Positions 3,501 to 64,000 of a stretch of 64,000 bases of DNA are shown here, piece after piece. The notes below the pieces were generated by a model. The model was not told the origin of the DNA, made no database searches, and saw only the letters and a list, made by a program, of their open reading frames with translations. The stretch is taken from positions 1,054,001-1,118,000 of the forward strand of contig NW_026781876.1 of assembly GCF_031769215.1 (NCBI RefSeq). Direction: 5' to 3'. Every line of letters begins with the position of its first letter. Positions within the stretch are counted from its first letter, which is position 1. This DNA comes from Ylistrum balloti (lineage: Eukaryota). A program made the translations under genes and the position numbers.

Positions 3501-6500
3501 CATTGTCGACCAAAAAATAAAACAAGGGAAGGAAGCCGAGCTTCAAATTTCTGCTGTATATTTCATCTTGTCGGGAAGAGGTAAGCTTTACTTCAGCCCG
3601 TACCTGTTGCAAAGAATACGACAAGCTTTAAAGATATTTACAATGTGATTAGAGTTATCTACCTTTGGGTGCTTGTCGTAGGTGTGACCTCCAGTCCTCT
3701 TTTGGCATCACATGTAATGTAGTACTGGCCTCGGCCTCACCCTCAGTGTTTTTGGCCACAACACGGATTTGTCCTGCATCATACTCTCGTACACGTGGAA
3801 TTTCAAGGTGGTGAATCATGCCATCGTAACGCAGTTTGAAACGTGTGCTCTGGAAGCCAGATATATTTAGGACATGTTAACTAGAACTTTTAGAAAAATG
3901 CTATATAAATACTTCCATACATGAGAACATCATATGTCAATCTGCTTAAACAATAATGCATTATCTTCAATAAGCTTGATGAGTGGGTGAATAGGGGTGG
4001 GTGGAGGGTGGTTAAAGGGGTCAACATCAGTATGTTTATAATTTCTCGACTCAAAGAAGAGTTTGTTTCTATATATAAGACAACAAAAAATCACTTTTTA
4101 GTATTCTCTGCTAATCAAATGTCATTTTATGGACACATACTACTAGCATAGTATGATGTCTGAACTGCTTTGTTTTTTACATTTTAATGTATTGTTCTGA
4201 GAACCGAACCTGTGGCAAATTAATTGTCAGAAGCAAATGAAACAAGAGGCCCATGGGCCTTAATGATCATCTGACATAAAAGATTTCAAATTTTGAACTT
4301 GAGAAGTCGAAAATGTGTTTTCAATATGGTGGCCATGACAGCCATGTTAGATTTCGGACCAACCCGAAATTAACAAACTTTGGTCAGGATCATGTCACGG
4401 TCATTTCAGGTAAGTTTCAACTCAATGACACATGTAGAACTTGAGAATAAGTTGGAAATGTTTACAACGGACGTCGTACGATTTCATAATTTACATTTCG
4501 TTAAAGTCAGAAATTACAAAAACTGGATTACATATCCACTATTTTTCTTGTTTAAGGATTCAAAGTAATTATTGCCATTATTAGTCACAAGCAGAATGAG
4601 TAAAATTTAAGCTTCCTCCACATTCAGTTTCCATTCAAATTACCAAACTGACCTTGAATGACCCAGAGTGACATGCGATATACTTACACCCATGATAACG
4701 GTTCCGTTGACCCACCAGTTGACACGGGGTCGTGGGTAACCGCTGACTTTGATCATGAACTTGGCGACCTCTCCTTCACCAGTTTCAACAGGTTCTGGTT
4801 TGAGATCAATTGAAGGTGGGAATCGCTCCCTCGGTTCATCAATAATTCTCTCTTCTAGGTACATGTTACTATAAAAAATCACTTTTAATGAGGTCGGTAG
4901 AATGTTTTAACAAAGAAATTATTACATGTATCTTGGTATATTTTCCATACAAAAATTCAAAGTATTTTACTATGGAAAATAGGAACTGGAATTTTTTAAA
5001 ACTTTAAAAACTTTAAATCAAATACAAAAAATAATCAGTCTGTTGCAGTCAATTAATGTAAAAAAAAAAGTGTTTTGTAAAATGAAAACAAATGAGACTT
5101 TTAAGAAATTTTTGAAATTATAATTAGCACAACTTTCAAAGAGGTAAATGTTAATGGCAGTGTTACCTTCTCCAGTATTCCTCCATCTCTTGAAGACGCA
5201 TGGCACCTTCTCCTGGAAGCTGTGTTTCCATGATGATGGACCGGCGTCCTGATAATAAAAACAGCATCATAATAAGCCTTATTTACATTTTACGCATCAC
5301 TTGATAATAACTAGACATTTTTCAGACGGAGTTTATGGTGGGGGTACATATTTTATTCAAAAATAAAATATTGATGTTTGAACATATTAAGTAAGACATT
5401 CTTACCTCTACATCGGAGAACAGCAGTTGTGGTTGCCTCCCCTTGAGAGTTGCGGGCAGTACAAGAGTATTCTCCAGAATCTTCGGGGTAGGTGTATAAA
5501 ATATCAAGGCAGACAAAGCCAAAATCATGCATGGGCTTGTAGCGATGACCTGGTTTGGAATAAAACAAGATTTTACATAAACTTAATAAAAAGTTTAAAA
5601 ATAAAGTATTTGTGATGATTAGCAGTCTGTCGTCATCACAGTTTTTTTTATATATTCTTCATACATGTATAGATATCCTGATGATTAGATAGATATTCTA
5701 TATATCATATAAAAATTCACATTTCAAAACAAATGTATTTTACATACAGTTATACAATACATTACCAGCTATTACAACTATGAGTGCATGAACCTGTATT
5801 TCTAATTTTCATTTGTCAAGTCTTGTTTAACAAGTCAAGTACAGTGAAGAAAAAAGGAGTTAAGTACAGTAGACAGTAGACAAAAGAGGAGTTAAGTACA
5901 GTAGACAAAAGAGGAGTTAATGGACCAATAATTTTATCAATCATGAAAATGATAATAGAACTCACCATGATGAAGTGGTTGTCCATCCTTAAACCACTCG
6001 ATCTCCATAGTAGGATCGCCAAGTGGAAGGAGCTTACACTCAAAGTGGGCGGAGTCATTCTCCTTCAGGCCCATCAGGTTCCTTATCTGTGTCTTGAACC
6101 AGGGTTTCTTGGGTTTATGTTTGTCATAGATGTCCTCTTGAGCAGGTGCTTCACCCTCGCGGCGGATGTACTCACGCACAGCGCTATCCTGATCTTCAAT
6201 TCTGTATAAATGGAAGAACTTATTTAATGTAAGATCATTTTAATTATCAAAGCACCTCTGTGACCTGAAGGAATGTAGTCAGTGTTTAGATGTTAGAAAA
6301 AAAGTAAAAAATTAATAATACAAATCACAAATCAAATGAAAAATATCAAAATAAAACTTTATAGTGCAAAAAATCACACGAAAGTGCAATACAATATATT
6401 TACATGATATATAACATCTTACTTATTACTTTATCACAGGCATTTTCTGCTGTGTTTGAAATTTCAGTGCTTATAAACATTGTACAATGTAGAATCTATA

Positions 6501-9500
6501 GGAAACCTGGTTCAAAAGAGGTAAATATTAGGACTGTAACAAAACATTAAAATGCAAAAGAAAAAGAATCACTCATGCAATTATATCATTAACAGTTTTC
6601 AACACATAAATGAACAAAACAAAATTAAGGAATATTTGAAATATCCAGTGTGGAAAAGCTTTCAAGGGAAATAACTCTTGAAATAAATCAGAGTAAAGAA
6701 TGACAATGTTTGTCAACTACAACCATTGCAGGGAGATAACTCTGAATAGAGTCAGAAGTAAGCATGGTTGCCCACAAAAAAAAAAAAATAACTGGGAGAC
6801 CACTCTGGAAAGATTTACAGTCTGCAATCAATATGGCTGTCTAAAACAACCATAAAAGGGAGATAACTCTTATAAGAGGTTAGTCTGGGAGTCAAACTGG
6901 TTGACAACATCTACAAAAGTGATAAAACTCTGGAAAGAAATCAAGATATTGAGGTAATTAAGGAACTGAAAAATGTCAAATTGGAAATAATGAATTTGAG
7001 GAGAAAATAAGAAGGTAAACGGATAAATAAATAAAGGAAGGAAACGTGACAAAAAACGGATTTTATTTCTATGCTTACAAAAAAAAAAAATTGTTTTCCC
7101 AGAAAAAATAATACATATATGTATATTTGTATTTTCAGATTCATTTTGAGGCTTTGAGGTTAGGGATGCATATCAAGGCTGCTGGCTTATAAAGGGAGAA
7201 GTAGAAAGTAGAGTTGACAGTTTGGGAGCTTTACACACTCCATGCCTTAGAGCGAACCTGACAAGAGACAACAAATCAGGGGCTCCCCCGATTACACCCA
7301 AATAATCCCTGTAGCAGAAATTCTCCGCGGCAAACACTCTGTGGAGGAAATCATATAACATTGTGTCAGCCACATTCAAAATCACTGAAAGCAAAGACAT
7401 AAATCATATTGACACTGGTTCTATACGACAAGAATATTGTACTAAGAACAGGTCAATTTGAAACATCTGTTATGTGTATACTGATAAAACAGAAATTTTT
7501 GATCGACCAGATCAAAGAAGAACAAATCTGTATTGATGTTGATATTTTTATCAGGTCATGAATTTTTTATACACAGCGTTTTATCATATATACAACTGCA
7601 AAAATAAAATCCTCTGTAAAGAAATCATCACGAAAAAGAAAACATACATGCTTATATATATATATATATGTACATCGTAGTTCATGCTGTAGACATGATG
7701 AAGCTATCACAGACAGTGTGTGTGAACATGGCGCAAGTCCACTGCAGGATATAAACTGATGAAACACAGAAAAGCAGTTAACTTTGTTGAGCATGACATT
7801 TGATGGGAAAAAAGGAATTTCAATCATTCAGGCACTTCTTCTATCAGATATAGTATCATTCCAAACTAAAGGTAATCGTGGGATCAGAGTGAAGACAGGT
7901 GTCGGAGTCTTATAGACATATCCTCTAGACAAAGGCAAGATTTCTGAAGCAATTTCAAACAACAGAGGTAGATACACAAAGTGACTATGATATACCTACA
8001 GGGGACATTCTGTGGTTAGGAAATTGATTGAAGTGAAAGTACAAGACTAGACAGGAATACTCATTAACCATCAACAAAGATTGAATATTTAGGATTGATA
8101 TAAAACATTCAGGTGTATATGGACAAGGTTGGTGTTTTTTTTATAAAAACATCACCAAGACATCAAAAGCATTCTGATTCAAATCAGATCTGCCTATTTT
8201 CACAAGGTGAAGTGAAGATTTCGGAACAAAGAGTGAATCTACTATCATTCTCTATAGGTGAAGATAACTCTAATCTCAGTGACGAAGGGAGGTAATTCAA
8301 ACCTCACATGCTATCTGGAGGTCTGCGCATAAAGCTAAGGACTCACAGAAGGAAATTTGATCACAAAGGGAGACAATTCAACATTCAGCAGCAACTGCAG
8401 TCAAGAGAGCTCTTCATACACAGAGGTAAGTATATCTAACCTATCCCATGTAGCTTCAATGGTTTCCTTGACTTTAATCACGTCCTTCCTCTCTGGTGAC
8501 CAGTATTCCCTGTCCTGGGACTCTCTGACAGTTGTGGCTGCCTTAGGAACTGTTGGAGCACGAACAGGTTCCCGCTGCCTAACTGGAGCGGGATCATGCA
8601 GTTGTTGTTCTTTAACCTCAATAATAAGTTTGTCCTTCGGCGGCTCAGACGTCTTGCGGACAATTCTAGCTGCTGGTACTGGTGGCTGCCCTCTACGCAG
8701 GACTGCCTGTTTGATTGTAATGGTAGCTTCCGACTTTTCTTTCTCAGAATCGGAGGGAACCATCACCATTTTTGTAAGTTCTAATGATGAGGAAGCCTCC
8801 TGTCCTTTAGGGACATAGAACTCCACTGGTGCAGGGGTTCCAGACACCGGTATATCAATTTGTGTTGCAACAGGGGACACCATTGGTGGTGATCTCCCTT
8901 GGGGCTTAGGGGACACTTTAGGGGCCACTTTCTCCTTTCTGTCACAAACAAAATCAATAGACAACACTGAATTAGCTCTGCCAAATTAGTGACCTACTGT
9001 ATTGTATTAAATATCACACTCCTACCTCCAAACCGTATCACCTAGTTCTACGATAATTGTTTATCAAGTGATCTATTTCTATATATATATTTTTTTTATC
9101 TCATTTTAATAAATTCATGTTTGCACCATATCTTTAACATTCATTTTTTTCCAGCAAAAGCTAACGAATCTATGTCAAAAATCTCAAAAGGTTTTGTTTT
9201 TTTTTTCCGTTCCTTTTGTAAGAAAAAAAAATGAATTTTGAAAGTGTGATATTTGAGAAAATCCTGAAATGAAGTGTCATTAATATTTGATCAGTGACCA
9301 ACATATAGACTTCTATACTAGACTAACAACTTTCATGCAATACAATATTTATCATAAAACAAAGTCGTTAACAATGAAACTAAAGGGCAGTTAACTCAAC
9401 ACTTAAAGAAGCAGAAATGAAAAAATATAGAAATGAAAATAAAGCTCATTTGAATGCAATAAAAAAAGTAGATTTTCTTGAGGGTGGAAACAAGAGAGAT

Positions 9501-12500
9501 TTCAAAGACAAGTGACAAACCTGTTAGATAGTATATAATAGTCCAACGATGGCTTAGAAAACCTATACATAAATTTTTTTGCACCTTGCAATTAAGTTAA
9601 GATTCCATTCTCAGTCACAACCTGCAGTTATTTTTCTAGATTTTAGATTTATCCATCAGCTATACAACATTTTTCTATTGCCCTATTCTATTGCTTTTTG
9701 TTTTCATATCACTTTCGTCCTCAATATTGTATAATATAAGGATATTGTCATTAATAATTCATAAAGAGGCTTCTGGGTTAAATAAAAGCAGTTTTAACAA
9801 TGCACACAAGCAGGCAGAAACCTATTCCGCACCTTGGCTCAAACATGGCAACTTTTGGTAGCTTTTGGACCTCTTGTGGCACAAAAGGTGGAGGTGCCAC
9901 TTGTGGTGGCGCAGGGGCCACTTGTGGTGGCTTAGGAGCCTGTTGTGGCACTACAGCAGGAGCTGGTGGTTGTTCCTTTGGTGGTGATGGTGTCTTAGAC
10001 TTCTTTTTCTTGCGTTGCTGCGGTGGTTTAACAGGTCTGATAGCAAGAGGAGAGAAAAGTTGTAGAGAAACAGTTTACAGGAATACAGTAGAAACACAGT
10101 AAATACAGCAGAAGTACAGAGATTTACAGTTTAGAGTTTAGAAAGACAATAGAGAATTCACTAATATTTCATACAGAAAAATTATTGTATTCTATCAATA
10201 TGAAATTACAATATCAAAAACAACATCATACAAAAACACATTTCTTAAACAAAAACAATACAATAAATCAGATAATATATTTAACAATTCTATAGATTGG
10301 AAAATAAATCTATTTGTAAATCATATCAAATCTGATAGCATGCTGTCTGTCATCTCATCATGCATGATGGGTATTTACACTTCAGAAATAGTAGGTGTTA
10401 GAAAATCTACTTAAATAAGAATCACAAAGAATTTTAATTTTAAAATATGGTGATTTTATAAACTGTAGACGGACCAAAATCAACCTTCTAAATTTCCAAA
10501 TGAGAAATATCACAATGAAATGTTGAAAGAAATCCAGAATTTACAAACAGATGGAAAAATTAACAAGGAAAAGCTCTCAAAACATACTGATGTAATCATC
10601 TTTGATGAGAAGGGAATTTTATCAAAACATAAAGGGAAGGGAGACAACTCCACATCAAAGTTTATAACCACCTGAACTGTTTGTACTTGGTCTGCAGTGA
10701 CGCGGGAAGCTGTGGTTCGTGTTTCGGTCTATCGTCATACCTAAGTATCAAAGTTAAAGACTAATGCACTGATCTTGCTACTCTAGGTTGAATCAACCAT
10801 GAACACTTGCCCAAAAATCAGTTATTTTTCCAAGTAATTATAATAAAAAAACTACTGGAAATCATCTCAATTTCAGCAACATTGCTGAAGCATTTCATTT
10901 CATAATAAATTCTGCTTCCAAAATAATAACCTAACATTTTAATTCACACAGGAGACATCAACTGAATTTCTATTCCAATTCTGTTGTATATTAGAAATGA
11001 GCGCTGAGTGTAGATGTTTAAAGAAGAAAATATTTCAACAACAGATATTTCACAATATATAAGATGATTTTCAGTACACTCTACATGAGATGCAGATGTA
11101 AGTCTGTTACATAATCTATTTATAGAATATAAGAACAAATCACATGATATCAAAATAAATAAAAGAGAAGTAATAGGTAACAAAATAACAATTTAAAAAT
11201 AAAAATTAACATTTATGAGTGAAATGGTTAAAAATTACCACAAAAGCTAAAATATGTTGGTAAAAAAAATCTTAAAAGCTTGAACATTTTTTCCGACTCT
11301 TTCAAACCAAGCATGATCAATTTAACCATTATGGAAACACGTATGAAATATATCTATTCTACCACACAAATTTAGATCAATTTTTTAAATGATTTTATAA
11401 AGATATATTATCAGTACAAGTGCTAGGTTTTTGAAGATCCAAAAGTTGTTAAGAGATTTAAGACATAACATATTGCTGATGTGGTAGGGCATCCAAAGCT
11501 ATAAAAATATCAATCATTTCTCACATCTACACATATTAATTCTTAATTAATTTCTAAAATGAAATTCTAATTTAATCATACTTTAAAATAATATAGGTAA
11601 CCACACTTCAAACATCACACAACCTAAAACTATTTCATAAAATTTAATTACTGAATATCATTCTGTATAACACATGTCTCCCATGTAGTAAAGCTAGTGT
11701 AATAACTACCGGTATGTATCTCGTTTAGTGACCAGTAAATCAATCAACAGTCAACATGCTTAGAGTATAATACACCCCTACCGGTCATATTCTTCCTCTG
11801 TGGATGACAGTACAGTCAGTGTCCTCGGTTTTGGCATTGGAAGGCGTGGTCTTTCCATAGACACAGATCTACAAGTGTCCAATCAGAATGTGCTTTACAT
11901 ATTTTATTAACCAAAGACACAGATCTTCAAGTGTCCAATTAGAATGTGCTTTACATATTGTATTAACCATAGACACAGATCTTCAAGTGTCCAATCAGAA
12001 GTGTCCAATCAGAAAGTGGTTTTAAGACTGAATTGACCAATTAAATCTCCTCTTGCAAATCATTACAGCGACTAAAAGATATCATCCAACATCTTTGCCT
12101 TCTTCCACTTTTCCATTTTTTTCAATTTTACAAAATTGACAAAAACAAAAAACTTAATTCCTCAAAACAAAACTGGGTCACGCTTTTATCATGGTGTCCT
12201 TCCAAACTTTGTTTTCAGCATCATATTTATTTGATGGCCCATGCAGATATTACTATACACACTCAGCCAAGATGGAATAGAGCATGCTTGGTAAATCTTT
12301 ATTCTCCAAGGAAACGTCATATTTTTCGGAAGAAAAAACAGGGGTATTTTGATAAAATATATCACCTTTTGGCATGCTTGTTAACAATGACTCATTTTTT
12401 TTTTCTTCTAAAAACAAATTTGATCTACACTGATCAAGTTGATGCTTCAAACATGCACATTGTTGAAAGCACATGTACAAATAGACTTCTTTTTACAAAT

Positions 12501-15500
12501 TCAAATTATCCTTCTTATTCCTTGCTGCAAAGCATGCTTGCTGTGACTGGCTATTTTTTCCGAATGTGAGCAACTAAATCATTCTGTCCACTAATTCAGG
12601 TAAAGCAGCCATCAGCTGTACGTACTGGCCATGTCTGACTAACTGCTGATACAACAGCCACAGTCTGTACTAACACAGGTTGCAAACTGACAGTATTTGT
12701 AACTTTATCAGTCAAGGAAAGACAAATCAAAGCCATGCAGATTTTGAAATCCTCAACAGCCAGTTCTTGAAATCCTCAACATGCAGATCTTCTTGAAATC
12801 CTCAACATGCAGATCTTCTTGAAATCCTCAACATGCAGATCTTCTTGAAATCCTACACAGGAAGATCTTCCTGAAATCCAAGCCATCAAATTTGGAATGG
12901 CTGCATGCAAGATCCACTAGAATAATGGCAGAGTTTTTCTTCCAGTAAATAATTTCTTTTCTCGATTTTATTCTCAACAACATGCTTTTTTTCATATTCT
13001 GTCAGATGTCACAATACACATACAACAAAGTTCAACATGCACATTCTGAGAATCAAAGATTGCCGCACCTTGATCGTGATGAATCAAGTTCATCCTCTGA
13101 CACAAGACGGAGGTAGCCAGCCTCAGTGTCTGATACATAGGTGATCATCTGAACTGGGCCTTCTGATTGGATGTCATAGCTGTTGAATATTCAATCAATG
13201 TCTTAGACTTTAATCGCTATCATCAAATTATAATTTTGTTTGTAAGTCATCATAAACAAAAACAAAATTGTTTGATGAAAAGTAGATACCTTGGAATTTC
13301 TAGTAAACCAGAAATTATATACAAGATATTTTTCAATTGCAGCTTCATGTAATTTTTATTTTAATTTTGTCATTGGAAACCAAATGTTTCAAAATTCAAA
13401 TTGAATAGTTCCATGCAGAATCAAAAATTGTATTTACGCTCCAGGTACGCCAGGTGGAATTGGGAGAACATCCATCGGTGATGGCTCCTTAGCCCTGGGG
13501 GCCTGGACATGTCTCACTGGTGATGGACTCGGTGGCTGGACATGTCTCACTGGTGATGGACTCGGTGGCTGGACATGTCTCACTGGTGATGGAGTCGGTG
13601 GCTGGACATGTCTCACTGGTGATTGAGTCGGTGGTACCTCGTCACGTTTTACTGTCTCTGGGCGGAACATTGGTTCCTGTGCCACAGGCTTAGGTGAAGG
13701 TTTGTGTGGTGCCACTGGTTTGGGTGATGCCACATGTTTAATTGGAGCCTTGGGTGGCTTACCAACAGGTGGCAATGATTTCTCTGGAGTTTCAAATCTC
13801 CTCTTAGCATCAGCCACATTCTGAGGCAGTACAGTTTCCTCCTCTTCCATTGGTTCCTCTGCGGTTGGTGGTGCTGCCTCAGGTGTTGCCATGGGAACCA
13901 TGGGTGGATGTGCAGGTGTTATATGTGCCTTTGTTACAATCCTAACAGGAACAAGGCAAGTCGATATCAGATATAACGCCAGCAAAAGGATATACCAAAA
14001 TATTTAATTCCTTTCATTATTTTAGTCATCAACGTGAAAAGTAATTACTTTAATCATACATTTGAAAAATCAATGAAAAGCTGCAATAAATAAAAAGAGA
14101 GAAAAAAATCACATTTGAATTCTCTGCGGAAAACCATTGACACACAAACACTGATTGAGAAGGAAAGATGGGTCACGCCACACCAGATAAACGGTTCACT
14201 CACATGCATTATCAAGAGATAACTGAAATAATCAAACATTGATTCCTCTATCACAGAAAACCACAGTTTTATGTAGAGCCTAAGCCCTATAGAATTCTGA
14301 TCATATCAGTACTAACTTGCGACGTTTGATGACAGGAGAGGATTCTACTGATGTGGAGGCTGGTGTAGGGGGAGGAACCCGTGGAAATGGGCGGTTATAC
14401 GTCTGCTCACTGGGTTTCTGAGTATGAGGCTTCGCCGCGGGGCTACACAGAGTCACAGTCACAAGAAGTCAGACAAGTGTCATGAAAACCTTCTGAATAC
14501 TCTTTGGTAATCTTTATAAAATATTCTGGATTCTTTGTAATTTCTAAATTTACCTAAATTCGATGAATATCTTTCACCTACATCATGTTTTTCAGAATAA
14601 CAGTTTCAATATTTAAGCATGAAATGATTACATAACAGAAGAAAATAAATGAAGATATGAAAGGACTAAAATCTATATTGTATAATTGACCTTGACTTAA
14701 TGTTTTGCTGACCTTGACAAGGTCATCATTTTCTATACTAGTTTTTCGTATCTGTCGATAGCTTTAGAGTTCAGCAACTGTTGGTGGTTAATCAGATATA
14801 TCTGCTTACATCTATTTACATTCAAAATTATTTGCATATTAAGTCTTCATGCTGCTGCAGTGCATTTTGGGATAAACTACCAGGCCATATGTGTTATAGT
14901 ATCACTTAAGGCAATACATGTCGGATCCCTTGTTTCTAATCTGCTACTAATTCGGCAAAAAAGCCCATGCTTGGTGAACTAATGCTGATACATTGTCCTG
15001 TAATAAGCCCATAACAATCCTGGAGTAATGTGTTGACTTCAAGCTTTATTACTGGAGATAGATATTAGCCAAACCTTGATATCACAGTAGAAATCAAATG
15101 AAATTACTTTAAATTCAAAATCCCATCACTATTTTAAGTCTAAGCTGAGTTGCAGTAACTAATATAAATATGAACAAAATCAACATGTAGTTGGCTATTT
15201 TCATATTGGAAATTTCTCAAATCTCTTTGTAGCTAAGTACCTACAATATTTATAATTACTCGTCTTTAATGTTTGATGTAGTACTAAATTGGGGCAAAAT
15301 AAAACCACTGCAAAACATAATGTATTAACATATTAAGCTATGAAAAATTGAAGTTGTCTTTAAATTTTAAATTGAAGTTGTCTTTAAATTTTGAATTGAA
15401 GTTGTCTTTAAATTTTAAATTGAAGTTGTCTTTAAATTTTTAGGAATCAAGGTTTTTCTGTAAATGTCTAAGAGTGGAAGAATGCTTTCATGCGATTAAA

Positions 15501-18500
15501 AGGATGACATAGCTTACGGACATATATTATGGTACAAACACGACGAGGAATTCTACAGTGATCATTCCTATTAACCCATTATGCACTGTTGCCATAGCTA
15601 CATGTGCTACTTCTGTCTTAGTGTTATTAGACGATAAGATTTAAAACTACATTCATATTAGTCTGCATTACAGCAGCCATCTCATTCACAAATTCTATAC
15701 TATCATACGAATTTATTTGACAAACATCAACAACAATTTTGTTAACTATACTACCAGGAAGTGGAAACTCTTAAATCGGAATATTTCAACTTCCATAACA
15801 AAATTAATTTACAATAGTAATCTAATTCATTTGCATGATCTTTTGAAAAATGAGTTGATAATTGAAATCCAGATTTAGGAGTTGTAACCACACAGTAGAG
15901 AAGCAACATCCAATCTAAGTACAAATTAAGTGTTAACAAACAACTAGAAAAAGACCACACACTGATTTGCTTTAAAATTTACTTATTCATGTGTTCTAGT
16001 GCGATATATATAGAGATCATACAACATGGTTATAACCATTTGTAAATTAAACCAACCTATCCTCTTTAGGTGGGGTGGGAGTACCCTTAAGGCGTAACGT
16101 CCCGCTTTCCAGTTCGGAAGCATACGATATCTGTTGTACGGGGCCCTCCTTATGTATATCATACCAACTAAAAGCAAAGCAGGTACAACATCAATGGAAA
16201 GGATTCATACAAACGTGGAAAACACATTTACAGTTAGGACTAGCTAACCTTAAAATGGCTTTTGCACTTCAAACTTAAAGAGGCAAATATTCAAATATAT
16301 TCAATATGGAATGGAAAGAGGGTTAAAAAATATCACGCAAATTCTTCTTCACACCAACCTAGGGTCAAAAGATATGAGCCACTTTCTTTCCAAAGTCATC
16401 TACATGCAGGACTTAAATATTGAGATAAAAAAAAAGGACAATCCGTTCTTCCTCTTTAATAGGATTTTGATAAAGAAATGGAACTACGGTGGGAAATTTT
16501 ATGTAGTGATTTTATGAAAAGATATTACTGAAAAACCTTCGTGTAAAATTTCCACACAACAACACATCTAAGAGTTAGCATGCCATGCTGATATGAACCT
16601 TGATGCATCCTCCTCCTTAATTAGACGCATAAGAGCACTTCCTGCCTCCGTGCTGTACGAGATCTGTTGTACCAAGCCTTCTGATTGGATGTCATAGTGA
16701 CTGTGGGGAAATTGACATACTTGTTACATTATCTGATTCAAGCACTGTGACAGGCTTTCATAGTGTCTGCATAAAGCATTCTGACTAACTGTTTTAATCA
16801 AGGTATTTGTAATGGATGGTGAGGGGATCAGCAAGGTTATTCCCAAAAATATCAAAGCTGGAAAGCAAACAAGTTATATACATGATGAAATGAATGCACA
16901 ATTGAGCATAAAGCAGTACATTACAAAGAAAGCTAAGGTATGATAGCGTAGAAGCTATACATCAAAGTGAGAAAGAGATGTGTAAGTTTGTAAGCAGACA
17001 TATATATATATATATATATATAGCTGTATAGTATGTGACTATTATCTCTGACAATCATCCCTGTTGATGTTCCAGAACTTGTCCATGCTTTCCCTCGCCT
17101 TCATCTCTATTTTTAAACAGTACTTACGGTGGTGACTGCGATCCTGGCATCCTTGCAGGGGGAGCTTTGGCTTGTTCCTGTGGTGCTACTTTTGGCACCA
17201 CCTGTGACGGTTTGGTAGCCACATGTGGTGGTGAAGAGACTTTGGGTATCGTGAACTTCTTCATAGGTTCCGGTTTTGGCATCTCAGCTGTTGACAAACG
17301 AAACGTTAACTCAACAATAATTAAACTGCATAAAATACAAAATGAAAACCAATATTCAATTGAAACAAGTCCAGATTGGAATTTGTTAGAATGTTATTTA
17401 TAATAATAATGAGAACTCATTAAAATAAGTGTCGTAAATAATATCAATTGAACAGTTTGATAAAGATCACAATATACGCTGATATCTACTGGTAGAAAAT
17501 AGAAAATGTTAACCTCATTATGATTAATTCCAAAGTTGGTGTAATAACACACAAATTTGCTTCAGTTTTTCCAAGGAATAACAAATAAAAAGTTTATAAT
17601 AAATAAATAACATTTATCTAAATTTGGTTCAACCAGACACAATAATAATGCAAGATACTTATACTGAAAGAGTTCAATAAATCCATGAACAAGACAAAGC
17701 AATTTCTGAAGGGACGAAAAAGATAAAATGTTTATACAGATATTCAAAAGACAATTACCTGGTACGACAACCTTGGCCCGTGTTGTGGCACTTCCAGCCA
17801 CATTGACGGCCGAGCACTGGAACCATGCTGAGTCTGCTGGCTCACAGCGTTCTATATACAATGTAGATCTGTTACCCTCTATGTCAATCCTGCAACATCA
17901 CAAAAAAAAAATCAATTTTTTATCAAATAAGCTTAGATAATGCACTATAGTACAATACATCAGTATCTAAATGCAGCCACAAAATCCTGTAACCTTTGAC
18001 CTTAAAGACATTAGTGTCTTTGACTGAAAATCACATAACTCAACCAACAATATCTCGTGACCTTTGACCTTATAAATTGTTCGGCGTCTTGGACTGAAAT
18101 TTATATACCTATGTAATTCAACCGATCATATCTTGTGACCTTTGACCTGAATATTTACATCTTTTGCTAATGATGATACATTCTCTCGTTCGATTGCTAC
18201 ACACCTGTATGGGCTGCTAGGAATCAGCATTTTTCCATCTTTCTGCCAGCTGATCATAGGGGTAGGTGTACCTGTGACGTCACAAGTCAGTGTTATAGGC
18301 TCTCCAGCCTTGGCAGTAATATTCGGTATTCTGTTCTGGAATTTCGGTGGCTGAAGCATTTCTTTCTCTGTTAAAACATAATAAATGTATTACAACAGAG
18401 TAACACATTGTCATACATAGCACATTGTTTTTGTTACATCGCATTACATCAAGCCTTTTTACAACAAATAACAGTGACATAATGTCCTCCAATATACTGT

Positions 18501-21500
18501 GAATGTGGCTATTTTTAAAGAGCTCTTTCTATAGCTATTTTAGATAAAGAAATAAAATAGCGTTAATTAGATAGATTAAGATTATAAAGAAGAGATAAAA
18601 CTATTGCTTATTTTAGGACTTCGGGGAAAAAAATCCTACTTGCTATGATCTTTTGATAAATCCTTGAAAATTTTGATCATCAGAAATGAAAAAACAGAAA
18701 AAAAAAAACTTTTTTTTTTATATGTCAACATTGTATTGTAATGACATACTAGAACACTGTGAGACTACTTACCTAGAATAGAGACGATAACATTGAAAGA
18801 ATTTTCCCCAGCTTTGCTCTTAGCTACACACATATAAGTTCCAGCGTCGTAGCGGCTTGCAGACAGAATGATAAGTGAATTCACTCCATCTTCATTGACA
18901 ACCGTCTGTAATTCAAACCAAAATCATTCCAGTTAATGTAACAGTATGATTTCAAACAATTACCAAACATTTCCTCAACTGACAGATTAGAATATATTAA
19001 ACATGAATTACATTATAAATATGTAAAAATGACCTTCACCTTATGATTCATGTCGTTGCGGACAGGCTGTCCATCTCTGTACCAGGTGAGCTCAGGGGCT
19101 GGGCGGCCAGACACAACAGTGTCCAGTCTGACTGTTTGACCTTCCCTGGCCTGTAAACTCTCAGGAACCTTTTTGAAGGTTGGGCGTAACAGTGCCTCAA
19201 GGATTCCACTTTGGTCCTCAGGCTTCTGGGCTTTGGTCTTGTCCCTACAAAGGTTCAATGATATTCAATTACAATTACATAATCATGTTGAAAGTCTTCT
19301 TTTGATAACCATTTTAAAAATGTCATATGCACAAAAGCTCAAACCCTAACCTCACCTCTAAAGACCAGATAGAACACTTACTTGGTCATCTTTTCTAGTG
19401 TGGTTGGAGCCACAAAAGAGGTGGAGTCAATCTGACCAACACCGTCCACATACAGCATGCTAGAGCAGGTGGCCTTGCCTGCTGCATTGACAGCTAAGAT
19501 GGTGAAGTGACCAGCGTCCTCTGGCAAGGCAATTCGGATACGGAGTGTGCAGTATCCGTCTTTGGTATATTTCATCTCATATCTGTTTGATCGTTTGATC
19601 CGGTGGCCATTTTTGTACCATGCAATCTGCAGTTGAAAGGAGCAGTTGGATAAGAAACAGGCAGGAATGATCAGTTATAAATTTTTTTCAGGAACACTTA
19701 ATGATATTATTTCACTTTTCATTTTTTTCAAATGTGAGATTTTTCTACATTACATGGGTGGGTTTGTTACCAGACGTGGGATAAGTATGCCATCTATATA
19801 ATAACCAATCAAATTATCGATAAAAAGAGATTACCATTATTTAGGTTTTTTAAAACCTAGAAACTGACCTTTGGCCTCGGACGACCTGTGACCCTACATA
19901 CAAAGGTTGCATCTGAACCCTCAATGAGACGGAAGTCCTTAAGTTTCTGGATGATTGCTGGGCTAGCAGGTGGCGCCGGTGGTCCACGGTCATCCTGAAG
20001 TTCAGATTCATATTCTGAAGTTTCTGTCTCACTTGAAATCTTGATGTGTCCATCACGCATGTAATTCTCACTCATCAGTCGCTGCTCAAACCCAACAGAC
20101 TGGAAGTCCTGCAAATATTAAACATATATTAGATATAAGATATCAATTTAACAGAATCTTTGCAAGTAAAACAGACAGACGACAAACAGATTTAACAGAA
20201 TCATTTCAAATAATACAGACAGACAATTAACAAGGACTTTTCTACTTTACTCACTTGTACAGGCGGTTGTTTCTTTTTCTCTGGTTCCTTTGACTGTCTA
20301 TACTGGAGGTTACTCTCAAGTATTTTCTCAGCACGAGTGACCACAAACTCCTGGGGCTGACGCTGTGGAGCCTCCATACGTGCCCTCAGCTCTGTCATGG
20401 GTGGTTCCCATGTCTTCTGAGGAGCAGGCTGTGGTTTCTGGACCTGAACAGGTTCCCATGGTTTCCTGGTTACTGGTTCCTGGACAGGAACATACTTCTC
20501 CTTTGGCTCAGCTGAGACCGGCTGCCAGCTCTTCAGCGGAGCCACAGGGATTGATGGTATCGGAGGAGGCGGTGGTGAGGGAGCCCTCACTGTAAAACAC
20601 GATGCAAATATAGTTTAAGGCAATGAATTCAGAATCAAAAAGTCACAGAAATCTGTTTGGTTGACGAACAATTTTAAAAAATGAGGATAAAAACTTGCTG
20701 CTTATCTAGCAGTGAAATTCCTTGTTTGAATAAATAGTAAACAAAGACCCATCAATGGATTTAATAAATGTTTTCTGCATTCATCCAAGATTACATCCCA
20801 CAAAGGAGACCAATAATCAAAAATGAGTTACTCTCAATAGTCTGAATCTGGTCTTCAGATAAATGTTTTCTTTGTTTGTATAAAAATATTGACATATATA
20901 TATATTATCATTATCCTGTTGTTATTTGTACCAATAACAGTGAGCTGACCTTCAGCAGGCAACAGAGTGGCTGTAACAGTATCTTCTCCAGCCAAATTGA
21001 CCGCAGTACATGTGTACTCTCCAGCATCATCAGGACGACAGTGAGAAATCGTCAATGAACAACGACCACTTAAGGTGTCAACAGTCATTCTGTGTCTGAA
21101 AAAGAAAAAACCTTACAATTAGAATCTATCTAAATCACAGCAACTTCTGTATCGATTCTGAATTATCAATTTGTACATTGTCTATATATCATTCATAGGA
21201 AGATATTCTATATGAATTTGACTTTTGTAAAGCATCCGTCATACAGCTTAATCATTTACAGTTTTAACAACTCATGGAACACTTACCACGATTTTTCCTA
21301 GATGGAAGTTTCTTTGCAGTAAATTAACAACACCAAAACTGACAGGAATGCAACATGTTACATATTGAAAACAATTGGCATCTCACCTGTTATCAGTTCT
21401 CATGGGGAATCCCCTCTTTTTCCAGGTGATTTCTGGGAAGGGCACTCCAGTCACATGACATTCAAAGATGGTGTTGGTAGCCTCAACAAGGCGTGAATTT

Positions 21501-24500
21501 CCAGGTTTGTCTGTGAATTGTGGACGGATAGGGGTCACCATTGGTGCCTTTTCTTCACGCTTCGGTGCCTTCATCTGCTGAACTGGTTCTTCCCTGATTG
21601 GAACGTCTTTCTCTGGCGTTGCCGCTAATGAGTTTTTTGATAAAAGAAAACATTTAGGACATTAAAATCACTGTCACAACACTTCCAAACAGGCTAAATA
21701 CCTACAGAGTAAATTAGAATTTTATGAAACTTTTGAAGCCAATTCTTCTTCGGCATTTAAGATCTTAAATGTATTTCACCAACACAGAGAGCTTACATAA
21801 TCATAACATTTTGCTGTTTGAGTAAGACTTACTTAAAACTGCAATTCATACGGGCAATTTTGTCTCAGTAAATCTTCAAAGGAAAACATTAGACAAAATT
21901 TTAATTTCTGTTATCTCCAATATTCCTTTGATTATTAATAGTTTTGATCCTTTATGAGATAAATTTTAACTTTTACTTCCTACATGACAACTTATTTCAA
22001 AATAATCATTCTTACGTTTGACTTCGAGTCTGGCTTCAGATATGGCACATCCCTCAGCGTTAGTAGCCACACATTTGAAGACTCCCGAATCTTCAGGGAA
22101 TATCTCAGCGATGGTCAGTCTGGCAGTGTTGTTCTCCCATGTGATCTCATAATCAGGTGAACTTGAGATCACTATTGTTTCTCTGAACCATTTGATAATA
22201 GGTTCTGGATGAGCAGATATGCGACACTCAAACACGACCCGTTCTCCTTCACAAGCAGAAATATTCTTCAATGTCTGTAATACAAAATAACCAAGGTAAC
22301 ATAAAAACTACACATTATTTTTTTTCAAAATCACAGATTAGACCTACAATATTTGTTAATTCGATTCCTTTGTGCAGGTAAGAATTGATGTTAACAGTTA
22401 TGTTGTTAATATTTCTCACTAATATTAATCCTTAAGATCCATCAGAGAGAGAATTTCTTTTTGTCCTATATCTATTTATTATTTATATTTTGTCTCACAC
22501 ATTGTATGATAACTATGAGTATTACCCCATAGATAAAAGTATTATCCTGTCGACATAAGTGATTACCCAGTAAGTATAAGTTTATACCAAGGATATACAC
22601 CACAGAGTAAATGTGTAAGTAAAACACGTGCTATTCTATATTGTGTTTAACGGTATGGAATTGTTCAAGATAAACTGATCCAGCATACCTGCGTGAAGCT
22701 AGGTTTCTCCTTGGTTGTCACAAACACTGGAGGTTTAGATAATGGTAGTGGTGGAGGTACGTCCTCCTCTGGTGCAGGTTCTTTGAAAAGCGGAATGCGC
22801 TTCTCAAAGGGAGCAAACTGTGGCTTGCTCTCTACGGGTACCTCCACCTTTTCTGTGAACATTTTCGGTTTTGGTTCTGGCCTTTTAACAAACTGTGATG
22901 GGCGTTGCAGCTTTGGAACCTTTGCGCTTGGTTCCTCTGTGGGCTCGAAAGGCTTGGGGGCTTCTCTAGGTGGGGCCCTCATCTGGTCAAAAGTCTCCTT
23001 TACCCCTATTACAGGCTTGTGTACAGGGGCAGGGGTCTGATCCATTGGGGCTACAAGATACAGCACATCAAACTGACGTTAATCAAATATCTTCAAAAGG
23101 TTAGAAAATTTCTTGAACAATTAACTTCAAACTATTTACATTTTTGGTATTCGAACCAATATTTTCATACTTTAAATATACTTTATTTTGCTTTATTACA
23201 CAGTACATTTTTGATTGGATATAAGTATGACATTTATAATTTAAGATTTCACAATTTAGTATTCTTCCTCAGAAATACTTCATTCAAGGTAGAAATTATC
23301 CTCGATACTCCATGGGTTACAATCATTTATGCTCTCTGTACCCCTGGAACATATCATGGCAAAATTGAAGATTCCTTGTGTAAAACTTTGTGGACAAGAC
23401 AAAATGACCAGTTTGATCCTTTGAGGTATATAAATAAATCTTGAGGTCATATAATATTTATTGTAATGGAGTGTTGCAGATTTGTAATCTTCCAAAGGAG
23501 TATATCAGCCTGTGATAGGTCAGTTTCTTTTCTCTTGAAACCAATCAAATGGTTTCACTTATGCCTTCAATTTTAACATGACATGTTCCAACGATGCAGA
23601 GAGCAAAGGTGGTTGTAACTCCAGGAGTATCAATGACGGGCAAAAGTTGCCAACAACAGTATCTCTATATAAGGATGATACTGACCCAGAATCCTGAGTT
23701 CAGTTGTACACTGGGCGTGTCCAGCAGGATTTTCGGCAGTAACAGTAAAGTTTCCGCCATCCTCTTGAAACACCTCTGGAATGTACAGAGTGTGGAGGTC
23801 ACCCTCCGTGATGATCTCAAAGTCTGGGGAGCTCACCACCTGGGCGCCTTCACGGTACCAGGTTACAGTTGGGGGTGGCTGACCTGACACGCGCACTCTG
23901 AAACGCACGGCCTGGCCTTCACGGCATTCTGTGATCTTTAGCTTCTCCGTGAACATTGGAGGAATCATTGTAGCTAGGACAGAAAACAATAATATAGTTA
24001 TATCATCAGAGTCAAAGACTACTGATTCAAACCCATCTTTTTTCCTTTTTTCCTTCTCTCTCTCATTTATTTTTTTATTTTATTTTCTCATTTTAAAGTA
24101 TAAAGCTTCAAAGTAAAGCCTCAGTTTTAAAAATGCAGAAATTTACAACATTATCAAAGTTTCATTCCCTCAAACTTTATAAAGATTTTGTATGAACAAA
24201 ATTACATTTCATGCATTTGAATGATGGATAATTATTTCACAAACACATTTTCATCCTTGTTTATGATAATCTTTGTATTTAAAGTTTTAATGACGTTGGT
24301 CGACTTGTACCTCTCACTACGAGTTGTGAAGAGCTAGTAGCTTGACCTCCTTCATTGTCAGCCTGGCACTCAAAACGCCCGGCATCCTCCTCAAAAACTT
24401 CTGGAATGGTAAGTGAGACACGTCCGTCTCTGTAGCCAATCTCAAAGTCTGCTTTGTCCGTGAGTTGTTTCCCTTCACGGAACCACTTGATAGTTGGCTG

Positions 24501-62966: not shown

Positions 62967-64000
62967 CCCTCCCTGTTGTCAGTTTTAGACTATCTGGCCA
63001 CACACACCCTCCCTGTTGTCAGTTTTAGACTATCTGGCCACACACACCCTCCCTGTTGTCAGTGTTAGACTATCTGGCCACACACACCCTCCCTGTTGTC
63101 AGTTTTAGACTATCTGGCCACACACACCCTCCCTGTTGTCAGTGTTAGACTATCTGGCCACACACACCCTCCCTGTTGTCAGTGTTAGACTATCTGGCCA
63201 CACACCCCCTCCCTGTTGTCAGTTTTAGACTATCTGGCCACACACACCCTCCCTGTTGTCAGTTTTAGACTATCTGGCCACACACACCCTCCCTGTTGTC
63301 AGTTTTAGACTATCTGGCCACACACACCCTCCCTGTTGTCAGTTTTAGACTATCTGGCCACACACACCCTCCCTGTTGTCAGTTTTAGACTACCTGGCCA
63401 CACAGACTCTCCCTGTTGTCAGTTTTAGACTATCTGGCCACACACACCCTCCCTGTTGTCAGTTTTAGACTATCTGGCCATACACACCCTCCCTGTTGTC
63501 AGTTTTAGACTATTTGGCCACACACACCCTCCCTGTTGTCAGTTTTAGACTATCTGGCCACACACACCCTCCCTGTTGTCAGTTTTAGACTATCTATAAT
63601 AGTTTGACTGTTGGTTTGGTGATGAAGCTGGCCACAGACCCTCCCTGTTGTCAGTTTTAGACTATCTGGCCACACAGACCCTCCCTGTTGTCAGTTTTAG
63701 ACTATCTATCATAGTTTGACTGTTGGTTTGGTGATGAAGCTAGCCACACAGACCCTCCCTGTTGTCAGTTTTAGACCATCTGGCCACACAGACCCTCCCT
63801 GTTGTCAGTTTTAGACTATCTGACCACACAGACCCTCCCTGTTGTCAGTTTTAGACTATCTACGGTAGTTTGACTGTTTGTTTGGTGATGAAGCTGGCCA
63901 CACAGACCCTCCCTGTTGTCAGTTTTAGACTATCTATGGTAGTTGGCCAGTTGGTTTGGTGATGAAGCTGGCCACACAGACCCTCCCTGTTGTCAGTTTT
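62967..64000 (+). repeat. 40-bp satellite with 74-bp long variants, runs off the window end
   Basis: ccctccctgttgtcagttttagactatctggccacacaca. Confidence 0.95.

What the first reader, a model, noticed from the sequence alone, without database searches (positions are those of the whole stretch)
13069..16700. Three paralogous cassette exons encoding an unassigned YDIxxEGxVQxI(S/T)Y...(E)xG..LRL motif
Seen: exons at 16599-16700, 16057-16167 and 13069-13179 encode HYDIQSEGLVQQISYSTEAGSALMRL, WYDIHKEGPVQQISYASELESGTLRL and YDIQSEGPVQMITYVSDTEAGYLRL. All are phase 2/2. A and C share the DNA CTATGACATCCAATCAGAAGGC and both end TCAAG|GT. None appears in the ORF track in this frame. The motif is hydrophobic and beta-strand-like within a disordered Pro-rich spacer, and I cannot assign it to a known domain. 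Inference: a dosage-tunable short linear motif (beta-augmentation ligand for a filamin/Ig/PDZ-type partner) selected by splicing.
Basis: partly seen in the sequence, partly recalled or inferred. Interest (0 to 1): 0.7.

Follow-up and report, generated by a model that had tools for sequence, protein, structure and literature searches.

The report
Conserved hairpin motif exons in mollusc titin
Three small exons in the stretchy, proline-rich part of a titin-like giant muscle gene encode copies of a strongly conserved ~30-residue peptide found in no domain database; related animals carry 3 to at least 9 copies, and its partner and any regulation by splicing are still unknown.

Summary
On the minus strand, exons at 16599-16700, 16057-16167 and 13069-13179 are 102, 111 and 111 nt long. 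Each is flanked by AG/GT, each is phase 2/2, and each encodes exactly the peptide quoted.

They lie in a Pro-rich, PEVK-like spacer of a connectin/titin (Sls-like) gene. That gene has a CCDC141/Zormin-like spectrin rod followed by a run of I-set Ig domains.

A profile built only from other organisms finds these three exons and nothing else in the window (E 7e-22 to 2e-15; next best 6.8). About 48 protein clusters from other animal contigs carry the motif, with the same exon borders and phase. Amino-acid identity to orthologues matches that of the Ig domains (about 60-77%), against about 35% for neighbouring spacer exons. dN is 0.17-0.28 with dS saturated. Copy number is 3 here, 3-4 in two relatives and at least 9 in another, where the motif alternates with a ~100-residue PEVK-like exon.

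Pfam, PDB sequences, Foldseek and paper text searches gave no match. AlphaFold2 predicts a beta-hairpin plus a short acidic helix (pLDDT 77).

No RNA run exists, so cassette splicing is untested, and no binding partner is known. The motif is a real, apparently undescribed titin-spacer module. The filamin/PDZ-ligand and splicing-dosage ideas remain conjecture. Other readers of this scan noted the same stretch.

The parts
16599..16700 (-). Motif exon A (102 nt, phase 2/2). Its peptide has the form HYDIQSEG-LVQQISY-STEAGS-ALMRL-IKEEDAS. It is the orthologue of the 'HYEIQPEG...LIKEEDxxR' type found in L001, L002 and L005.
16057..16167 (-). Motif exon B (111 nt, phase 2/2). It belongs to the 'LRLK..PP' type, whose orthologue lies in L001 at 11250. 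No B-type copy is seen in L002.
13069..13179 (-). Motif exon C (111 nt, phase 2/2). It belongs to the 'SY[ED]IQxEGPVQQI[ST]YVSDTExGYLR[LI]VSEDELD' type, the commonest type elsewhere and the one amplified in L005 and L006.
17128..17287 (-). First spacer exon (160 nt, Pro-rich). It enters in phase 1 from the Ig exon, which ends CCA G|gt, and leaves in phase 2. It therefore sets the phase for all following spacer exons.
   Evidence: splice sites and frame only; no transcript
14317..14442 (-). Predicted Pro-rich spacer exon, phase 2/2.
   Evidence: prediction only
13438..13941 (-). E-rich/PEVK-like spacer exon just upstream of exon C (phase 2/2). It is homologous to L002 11375-11719 and to the ~100-residue partner exon of the L005 super-repeat ('..EAR.KFD..' followed by a KP-rich stretch). 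It holds a 33-nt x4 in-frame tandem repeat at 13503-13634.
9833..10036 (-). PEVK-like spacer exon (33% Pro), phase 2/2. It shows weak homology to L002 14427-14702.
8441..8938 (-). Last large spacer exon, phase 2/2.
   Evidence: prediction only
17565..31244 (-). Run of I-set Ig-domain exons with two further Pro-rich exons, upstream of the spacer. It is collinear with the Ig exons of L002 (57-85% amino-acid identity) and L001.
3658..6239 (-). Ig-domain exons downstream of the spacer, orthologous to L002 17724-18854.
32096..51575 (-). Spectrin-like repeat exons upstream of the Ig run, giving the CCDC141/Zormin-like part of the gene. Pfam matches are DUF7799, Spectrin_7 and Spectrin.
   Evidence: literature PMC12198301, PMC12657953

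Best explanation
The three exons are copies of an old, strongly conserved peptide module of about 33-36 residues. Its core is x-Y-[ED]-I-x-x-E-G-P-V-Q-x-I-[ST]-Y-x-[ST]-[DE]-x-E-x-[GA]-x-L-R-[LI]-[VI], followed by an acidic tail.

The module lies in the PEVK-like spacer of an invertebrate connectin/titin (Sls-like) gene. Other notes of this scan call the genome a scallop.

Shown here:
- The exons are coding and under purifying selection.
- Each paralogue type (A, B, C) has its own orthologues in other animals, with the same exon borders and phase.
- The module is an ordered island in an otherwise Pro-rich, low-complexity spring.
- Copy number differs between lineages, from 3 to at least 9.

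Inferred: the module forms a beta-hairpin followed by an acidic tail. I propose that it acts as a multivalent docking or cross-linking point for a sarcomere or dense-body partner, probably by strand addition. On this view the number of copies sets how many links the spacer can make. That number is fixed in the gene, and exon skipping could lower it, because every phase-2 exon can be dropped in frame. The arrangement resembles the exon-modular Z-repeats of vertebrate titin, but the peptide is unrelated.
For: Splice sites, phase and frames come.

An independent profile recovers only these three exons. The profile search of 1.84e9 proteins returned 53 hits, of which about 48 are animal ORF fragments with the same motif ending at the same donor.

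The related loci show an Ig run followed by the motif exons in the same order, with conserved acceptor and donor positions.

Motif exons are 59-77% identical to orthologues. Ig exons average 57-68% and neighbouring spacer exons about 35%. dN is 0.17-0.28 with dS above 1 or saturated. For example, 'YDIQSEG' is written with 7 of 7 different codons in L002.

L005 has at least 9 motif exons alternating with a ~100-residue PEVK-like exon.

The AlphaFold2 model has strands at residues 11-15 and 20-24 and a helix at 28-34, with pLDDT 77 overall and 88 in the hairpin core.

The spacer is 22% Pro against 0-11% in the motif exons, and no exon-skipping junction creates a stop codon.

Gene identity rests and on PMC12198301 and PMC12657953.
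Against: - No partner was identified, and no binding test is possible with these tools.
- The hairpin is a prediction for an isolated 36-mer (pTM 0.35). The single-sequence model of a natural 3-copy ORF was useless (pLDDT 31).
- Flanking introns are not conserved, unlike those of many regulated cassette exons.
- Synonymous-site conservation is only weakly and inconsistently raised.
- In some relatives the motif lies in one ORF with neighbouring spacer sequence, which argues against an obligatory cassette.
Confidence: 0.55

Rival explanations
1. The module is a self-association ('zipper') element. The hairpins pair with each other, within one molecule or between parallel titin molecules. This would form reversible beta-sheet cross-links that shorten or stiffen the PEVK-like spring and break under load. 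No foreign partner would be needed.
For: The predicted hairpin has exposed edges. The module is repeated at regular ~135-residue intervals in L005. It sits inside an entropic-spring-like sequence.
Against: No model shows repeat-to-repeat packing. The 3-copy ORF P0001 folded with pLDDT 31 and no contacts between hairpins. The conserved charged and polar face (E, Q, D, T, E) looks more like a recognition surface than a sticky edge; this is my inference.
Confidence: 0.2
2. The module is a phosphorylation-controlled stiffness switch. The turn [ST]-[DE]-x-E fits an acidophilic (CK2-type) S-x-x-E site, and 'SPSP' often precedes the motif in relatives. On this view the module mainly tunes spring properties by charge and is not a binding site.
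For: The conserved S/T-D/E-x-E in alignment columns 17-20. A 'KSPSPR' ending on the partner exon in L005. Phosphorylation of titin spring segments is established knowledge in vertebrates.
Against: The conserved core, about 25 residues from Y2 to V27, is much larger than a kinase site, and the invariant V-Q-x-I lies outside the turn. No phosphoproteomic data are available.
Confidence: 0.1
3. The motif belongs to a repeat already described in the titin family (kettin spacer motifs I/II, Sls/Zormin unique sequences, Z-repeats or PEVK PPAK units) and is simply absent from the libraries I could search.
For: Kettin has ~35-40-residue spacers with two conserved motifs proposed to bind actin (PMC3207145). 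Their sequences appear only in a figure, so I could not compare them. No long annotated titin-like protein appeared among the hits, so I cannot tell whether the library covers giant eukaryotic proteins.
Against: There was no Pfam hit at E<=10, including Titin_Z and PPAK. There was no PDB sequence hit at E<=10. No paper contains any of six motif strings. Kettin spacers lie between every pair of Ig domains, whereas these exons lie inside a Pro-rich spacer.
Confidence: 0.1
4. The similarity is chance, or the exons are non-coding pseudo-exons.
For: No transcript evidence.
Against: Profile E-values reach 1e-22 with an outside-only model. Exon borders are conserved across loci. dN is far below dS. 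Orthologues exist for each paralogue type.
Confidence: 0.02

Closest known systems
Titin Z-repeats (vertebrate titin; Pfam Titin_Z)
   Same: Both are short peptide repeats of roughly 35-45 residues. Both lie between Ig domains near the N-terminal part of a titin-family protein. Each copy sits on its own symmetric exon, and copy number varies. In vertebrates that variation arises by alternative splicing, and the repeats act as multivalent alpha-actinin docking sites (established knowledge).
   Different: There is no sequence relation (no Pfam hit at E<=10). Z-repeats bind as helices, whereas this motif is predicted to form a beta-hairpin. The partner here is unknown, and the copy-number variation shown here is genomic, not by splicing.
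PEVK/PPAK exon modules of the titin spring
   Same: The motif exons sit among Pro/Glu/Val/Lys-rich exons that are all symmetric in phase, as in the vertebrate titin PEVK region. In L005 the motif alternates with a PEVK-like exon as a two-exon super-repeat.
   Different: The motif itself is poor in Pro (0-11%) and rich in beta-formers. It is far better conserved than the PEVK-like exons (about 70% against about 35% identity). It gave no PPAK hit.
Kettin spacer motifs I/II and MLCK/twitchin DFRxxL motifs (short actin- or myosin-binding motifs in linkers of Ig-family muscle proteins)
   Same: These are conserved short motifs in linkers of giant Ig-repeat muscle proteins, repeated many times and proposed to act as filament-binding sites (PMC3207145 for kettin; DFRxxL from established knowledge).
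   Different: Kettin motifs sit in every Ig-Ig linker, whereas these exons lie inside a long Pro-rich spacer. No DFRxxL pattern is present. I could not compare sequences with the kettin motifs because they are not in any searchable library here.
Connectin/titin-Sls locus with a CCDC141/Zormin head ('connectitin', Hanashima et al. 2025, PMC12198301)
   Same: The host gene has spectrin-like repeats (DUF7799, Spectrin_7) followed on the same strand by tandem I-set Ig domains and PEVK-like spacers. This matches the Zormin-plus-Sls arrangement in Drosophila and the CCDC141-TTN synteny in vertebrates.
   Different: That paper describes domain architecture and synteny. It does not describe this motif. 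The kinase and FN3 parts lie outside the window.
Filamin/PDZ/Ig beta-strand-addition ligands
   Same: The motif is a short segment with alternating hydrophobic residues in a disordered context, and it is predicted to form beta structure.
   Different: Known filamin and PDZ ligands are single strands of about 8-12 residues. This is a ~26-residue conserved hairpin with a further conserved N-terminal Y-[ED]-I. No partner has been tested.

Membership tests
Titin Z-repeat (Pfam Titin_Z) | Sequence match to the ~45-residue Z-repeat profile | tested here: not met
   hmmscan of the three exon peptides and five motif-bearing relatives against Pfam-A at E<=10 gave no Titin_Z hit.
Titin Z-repeat (Pfam Titin_Z) | Helical alpha-actinin EF-hand ligand | tested here: not met
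   The AlphaFold2 model shows a beta-hairpin across the conserved core. The only helix is the short, variable acidic tail. Binding itself cannot be tested here.
PEVK / PPAK repeat | Pro/Glu/Val/Lys-rich ~28-residue unit matching the PPAK profile | tested here: not met
   There was no PPAK hit. The motif exons are 18-33% P+E+V+K against 50% for neighbouring exons.
Immunoglobulin I-set domain (fragment of) | Profile similarity to an Ig domain | tested here: not met
   hhalign of the motif alignment A2 against a complete I-set domain of the same gene gave probability 0.1%. There was no Pfam Ig hit.
Connectin/titin-Sls gene (host gene) | Tandem I-set Ig domains | tested here: met
   I-set hits reach E 1e-21 on several exons. 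The Ig exons are collinear with those of related loci.
Connectin/titin-Sls gene (host gene) | PEVK-like spacer | tested here: met
   The spacer exons are 22% Pro and 50% P+E+V+K, and all are in symmetric phase.
Connectin/titin-Sls gene (host gene) | CCDC141/Zormin-like spectrin repeats upstream on the same strand | tested here: met
   DUF7799 at E 3.5e-14 and Spectrin_7 at E 1.5e-8, plus weaker Spectrin hits. The architecture is as described in PMC12198301.
Connectin/titin-Sls gene (host gene) | FN3 domains and a C-terminal kinase | not testable with these tools
   The 3' part of the gene lies beyond position 1 of the window.
Alternatively spliced cassette exon | Length a multiple of 3, symmetric phase, and skipping that keeps the frame | tested here: met
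   The exons are 102, 111 and 111 nt and phase 2/2. No junction between any pair of phase-2 spacer exons makes a stop codon.
Alternatively spliced cassette exon | Transcripts both with and without the exon | not testable with these tools
   No RNA run holds the locus. The only run found is DNA and shows no joints.
Alternatively spliced cassette exon | Conserved flanking intron sequence or raised synonymous conservation | tested here: inconclusive
   There is no intron-flank similarity to L001 or L002 (z<2), but those species may be too distant for this test. The same-codon fraction is 0.58-0.68 against 0.40 for Ig exons versus L001, yet 0.41-0.62 against 0.47 versus L002.
Short linear motif / beta-strand-addition ligand | A short conserved island in a disordered region | tested here: met
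   Conservation is about 70% against about 35% for the surrounding spacer. The context is Pro-rich.
Short linear motif / beta-strand-addition ligand | A defined folded partner domain that it binds | not testable with these tools
   No complex prediction or binding assay is available here.

The most novel reading that the evidence does not exclude
The module is a previously unrecognised functional element of invertebrate titin. It would be a beta-hairpin unit that cross-links the spring to a Z-disc/dense-body or thin-filament partner, or zips titin molecules to each other. The number of links would be set by lineage-specific exon amplification (3 to at least 9) and by muscle-type-specific exon skipping, for example striated versus catch adductor. 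That would make it the lophotrochozoan functional counterpart of the vertebrate Z-repeats, built from an unrelated peptide.
Probability: 0.15. Interest if true: 0.7.

Novelty: new variant of a known kind. Interest (0 to 1): 0.45.

Why it matters
Titin-family springs are usually described as Ig domains plus featureless PEVK-type sequence. Here the spring contains a short element as conserved as the Ig domains. It is kept as separate paralogue types across species and has been amplified in some lineages, so it almost certainly does something specific.

Molluscs have muscles with extreme passive properties, such as catch muscle, and scallop titin isoforms differ between striated and catch muscle (PMC5963113). 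A defined, testable module in the spacer gives a handle on how invertebrate titin is anchored or tuned.

The motif would also improve annotation. No hit from an annotated long protein appeared, so these small exons may often be missed in gene models. I could not test that.

Tried and rejected
- **RNA evidence.** The look-up of sequencing runs (kind rna) gave a single run with no RNA on record. Laying it showed genomic contigs of another individual and no joints.
- **Pfam.** The three peptides and five relatives gave only sub-threshold noise at E<=10.
- **PDB.** A sequence profile search at E<=10 gave no hits. Foldseek of the hairpin model against PDB gave nothing below E=4.
- **Second fold.** AlphaFold2 of the natural 3-copy ORF P0001 without an alignment gave pLDDT 31 and is unusable.
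- **Papers.** A full-text search for six motif strings found no paper. A search for run and assembly accessions, meant to learn the source organisms of the related contigs, also found none.
- **Rfam.** A scan of the window found no families.
- **Ig-fragment idea.** Rejected by hhalign.
- **Fourth or fifth copy.** I looked for a D- or E-type copy in the window. The only candidate, 'VLSSTEEEYDR' at 11781-11882, scores 6.5 bits (E 1.7) and is not significant.
- **Intron-flank conservation.** None between species or between paralogues.
- **Bacterial or phage-like hits.** Five hits of the big search (P0044, P0046, P0051-P0053) match only profile positions 10-25. I judged them unrelated.
- **Organisms of the related loci.** L001-L006 could not be assigned to species with these tools. 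'Scallop' comes from other agents' notes, and I did not test it.
- **Joined protein model.** All searches were done exon by exon or with natural ORFs.
- **The search for homologous proteins.** Not used. Its length window (0.55-1.75x) makes 33-36-residue queries blind to long proteins.


Full report
**1. Observation**

The gene runs on the minus strand. Reading that strand, the three stretches are clean internal exons.

| Exon | Coordinates | Length |
|---|---|---|
| A | 16599-16700 | 102 nt |
| B | 16057-16167 | 111 nt |
| C | 13069-13179 | 111 nt |

Each exon is preceded by AG and followed by GT. Each starts with the third base of a split codon and ends with two bases (phase 2/2). A and C share the quoted 22-nt string, and both end ATCAAG|GT.

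A profile made from the three peptides finds no further copy in any of the six frames (72-79 bits, against 6.8 bits for the next best).

The fairer test uses a profile built only from 44 sequences of other organisms. It finds exactly these three segments among 3467 six-frame segments (E 7.4e-22, 7.9e-16, 2.2e-15; next best E 6.8).

**2. The host gene**

Going 5' to 3' on the minus strand, the window holds four regions:
- Spectrin-like repeat exons at about 51-32 kb (Pfam DUF7799 at E 3.5e-14, Spectrin_7 at E 1.5e-8, and weaker Spectrin hits).
- A run of I-set Ig-domain exons at about 31-17.5 kb (E down to 1e-21), with two Pro-rich exons among them.
- The spacer at about 17.3-8.4 kb.
- Ig exons again at about 6.2-3.6 kb.

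This is the CCDC141/Zormin-plus-connectin/titin (Sls) arrangement. Hanashima et al. describe it as conserved synteny, or a single 'connectitin' gene (PMC12198301). A second paper calls Zormin the CCDC141 orthologue encoded by the Drosophila sls gene (PMC12657953).

Other agents' notes in this scan call the genome a scallop. I did not test that. Another first-reader note (s1-262809) reached the same reading of the gene, and my Pfam results agree with it.

**3. The spacer**

The Ig exon upstream ends in phase 1 (CCA G|gt). The first spacer exon, 17128-17287, converts phase 1 to phase 2. It is followed by nine candidate exons that are all phase 2/2:

| Order | Exon |
|---|---|
| 1 | A |
| 2 | B |
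| 3 | 14317-14442 |
| 4 | 13438-13941 |
| 5 | C |
| 6 | 11782-11868 |
| 7 | 10672-10740 |
| 8 | 9833-10036 |
| 9 | 8441-8938 |

These come, and they agree with note s1-262966. The two smallest exons (11782-11868 and 10672-10740) rest on splice-site logic alone.

The non-motif exons are 22% Pro and 50% P+E+V+K. The motif exons are 0-11% Pro. No pairing of a phase-2 exon end with a later exon start makes a stop codon. Any subset could therefore be skipped in frame. That permits combinatorial splicing but is not evidence for it.

**4. Relatives**

Five hits match only profile positions 10-25, and I set them aside. These are P0044, P0046, P0052 and P0053, which are Gly-rich proteins with '..RITYATDTATASVRG..' repeats, and P0051, which is Arg-rich.

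The other 48 or so are short ORFs called on eukaryotic contigs in metagenome and Logan assemblies. Each contains one motif, rarely three. The motif is typically preceded by intron-like Y-rich read-through. It typically ends at '..R' followed by 'FV' or 'LV', which is the AG|GTTTGT donor read through. None carries a name.

Four contigs gave usable context:

| Locus | Contig | Motif exons found |
|---|---|---|
| L001 | 467 kb | four, in the order A-type, B-type, C-type, then a fourth 'D' type |
| L002 | 31.7-kb Logan contig, short introns | A-type, C-type and an 'E' type |
| L005 | 5.3 Mb | at least nine in 20 kb |
| L006 | 2.15 Mb | at least five in 20 kb |

In L001 and L002 the motif exons follow a run of I-set exons, as in the window.

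The window and L002 are collinear exon by exon, from the Ig run through the spacer to the downstream Ig exons. Acceptor and donor positions, and therefore phase, are the same in L001 and L002.

Each of the window's three paralogue types has its own orthologues elsewhere:
- A: 'HYEIQPEG...LIKEEDxxR'
- B: '...LRLK..PP..'
- C: 'SYEIQEEGPVQQISYVSDTExGYLRLVSEDELD..R'

The triplication is therefore old, and all copies have been kept.

**5. Selection**

Amino-acid identity of motif exons to orthologues is 0.73-0.77 with L002 and 0.59-0.75 with L001. Ig exons average 0.68 and 0.57 respectively. The PEVK-like exons that could be aligned at all reach about 0.35.

dN is 0.17-0.28, while dS is above 1 or cannot be computed because of saturation. 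In L002 the C-type 'YDIQSEG' uses seven different codons from the window's C for the same seven residues. The constraint is therefore on the protein.

Similarity stops at the exon borders, both between species and between paralogues.

One detail is worth recording. The window's exon A begins 'YDIQSEG' with exactly the codons of the window's exon C, giving the 22 identical nt. All A-type orthologues have 'YEIQPEG'. The simplest reading is a short gene-conversion tract from C into A in this lineage. It does not need an RNA-level signal to explain it.

**6. Super-repeat in relatives**

In L005 the motif exon (36 codons) alternates with an exon of about 97-105 codons. That exon has an acidic start, a conserved '..EAR.KFD..' segment and a KP-rich stretch ending 'KSPSPR'. 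The unit totals about 135 residues. Successive motif exons there lie 1.35-2.1 kb apart, apart from one 4.3-kb gap.

The window's exon 13438-13941, just upstream of C, is the homologue of that partner exon ('..ADAKRRFE..' followed by KP-rich sequence). It has itself grown by a 33-nt x4 in-frame tandem repeat.

Copy number of the module is thus a lineage variable: 3, 3, 4, at least 5 and at least 9.

**7. Structure**

With the 47-sequence alignment A2, AlphaFold2 gives the following for exon C's 36 residues:
- mean pLDDT 77, with blocks of 66, 88, 82 and 68;
- strands at residues 11-15 (M-I-T-Y-V) and 20-24 (A-G-Y-L-R);
- a four-residue turn (S-D-T-E) between them;
- a short helix in the acidic tail (residues 28-34).

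The invariant or near-invariant positions are G8, V10, Q11, I13, Y15 and R25 (alignment columns). They lie in and just before the hairpin.

Foldseek finds nothing meaningful for so small a model. The PDB sequence profile search is empty at E<=10. hhalign against an Ig domain of the same gene is negative. Pfam is empty.

**8. What it most likely is and does**

Shown: this is a real, conserved, exon-modular peptide repeat of the titin/Sls spacer, and no library I could search describes it.

Inferred (about 35-40% for this specific mechanism): it is a docking or cross-link site that adds its hairpin to a partner's sheet, used multivalently. This makes it functionally analogous to the exon-modular Z-repeats of vertebrate titin but unrelated in sequence and predicted structure.

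Rivals are self-zippering hairpins that give the spring reversible cross-links (about 20%) and a phospho-switch centred on the S/T-D/E-x-E turn (about 10%). A further possibility is membership of a repeat already described, which I could not see (about 10%). For example, the sequences of the kettin spacer motifs of PMC3207145 appear only in a figure.

**9. Splicing**

No RNA run holds the locus. The only run is DNA from another individual. 'Cassette' therefore remains a structural possibility only.

In its favour: the exons have symmetric phase, all junctions are stop-free, and I-band titin/Sls exons are generally known to be alternatively spliced. In addition, scallop titin transcripts and proteins differ between striated and catch muscle (PMC5963113).

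Against an obligatory cassette: in some relatives the motif lies in one ORF with adjacent spacer sequence (P0023, P0034, P0011). Flanking introns also show no conservation.

**10. Limits**

- All related sequences are anonymous contig fragments, so the phylogenetic range is unknown. It probably covers molluscs and perhaps other marine invertebrates.
- No long annotated protein appeared among the hits. This may reflect the make-up of the library rather than biology.
- Other readers of this scan noted the same stretch (s1-262852, s1-262966).

Noticed in passing
window 16679-16700 and 13158-13179 (minus strand): The window's exon A starts 'YDIQSEG' with the same codons as exon C (22 identical nt). 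A-type orthologues in L001, L002 and other hits all read 'YEIQPEG'. This looks like a short gene-conversion tract from C into A in this lineage.
   Followed up: partly
L005:2699-19780 and L006:497-17112: In two large anonymous contigs the motif exon is amplified to at least 9 and at least 5 copies. In L005 it alternates with a ~100-residue exon (acidic start, '..EAR.KFD..', KP-rich, ending 'KSPSPR'), forming a ~135-residue two-exon super-repeat.
   Followed up: partly
window 13503-13634 (minus-strand exon 13438-13941): A 33-nt tandem repeat of 4.0 copies (97% matches) lies in frame inside the PEVK-like exon and encodes 'PSPSPVRHVQP' four times. It is a recent in-exon expansion of the spring.
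   Followed up: partly
P0044, P0046, P0052, P0053 (hits): These are Gly-rich proteins of 322-361 residues, apparently not from animals. They carry 4-6 repeats of '..VQRITYATDTATASVRGPL..' spaced by 'GW..GG'. They resemble the hairpin core of the motif (profile positions 10-25 only), probably by convergence on a hairpin.
   Followed up: no
window 11782-11868 (minus strand): This candidate small spacer exon ends '..TLTVLSSTEEEYD', which faintly recalls the tail of the E-type motif of L002 ('..TLRLVGYSTEDEPD'). The match is not significant (6.5 bits, E 1.7). A 56-nt tandem repeat (11855-12000) overlaps its acceptor, so the exon itself is doubtful.
   Followed up: partly
window 56957-58037 (+ strand reading): A 47-nt minisatellite (about 13-20 copies, 89-96% matches) stays open in all three frames for up to about 200 codons, which gives misleading long ORFs. 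Further arrays lie at 62967-63861 (40 nt x22.7), 53631-54078, 49210-49618 and 41463-41730.
   Followed up: no
window 17128-17287 (minus strand): The first spacer exon changes the reading phase from 1, as used by the Ig exons, to 2, as used by all spacer exons. It must be included whenever any spacer exon is used.
   Followed up: partly
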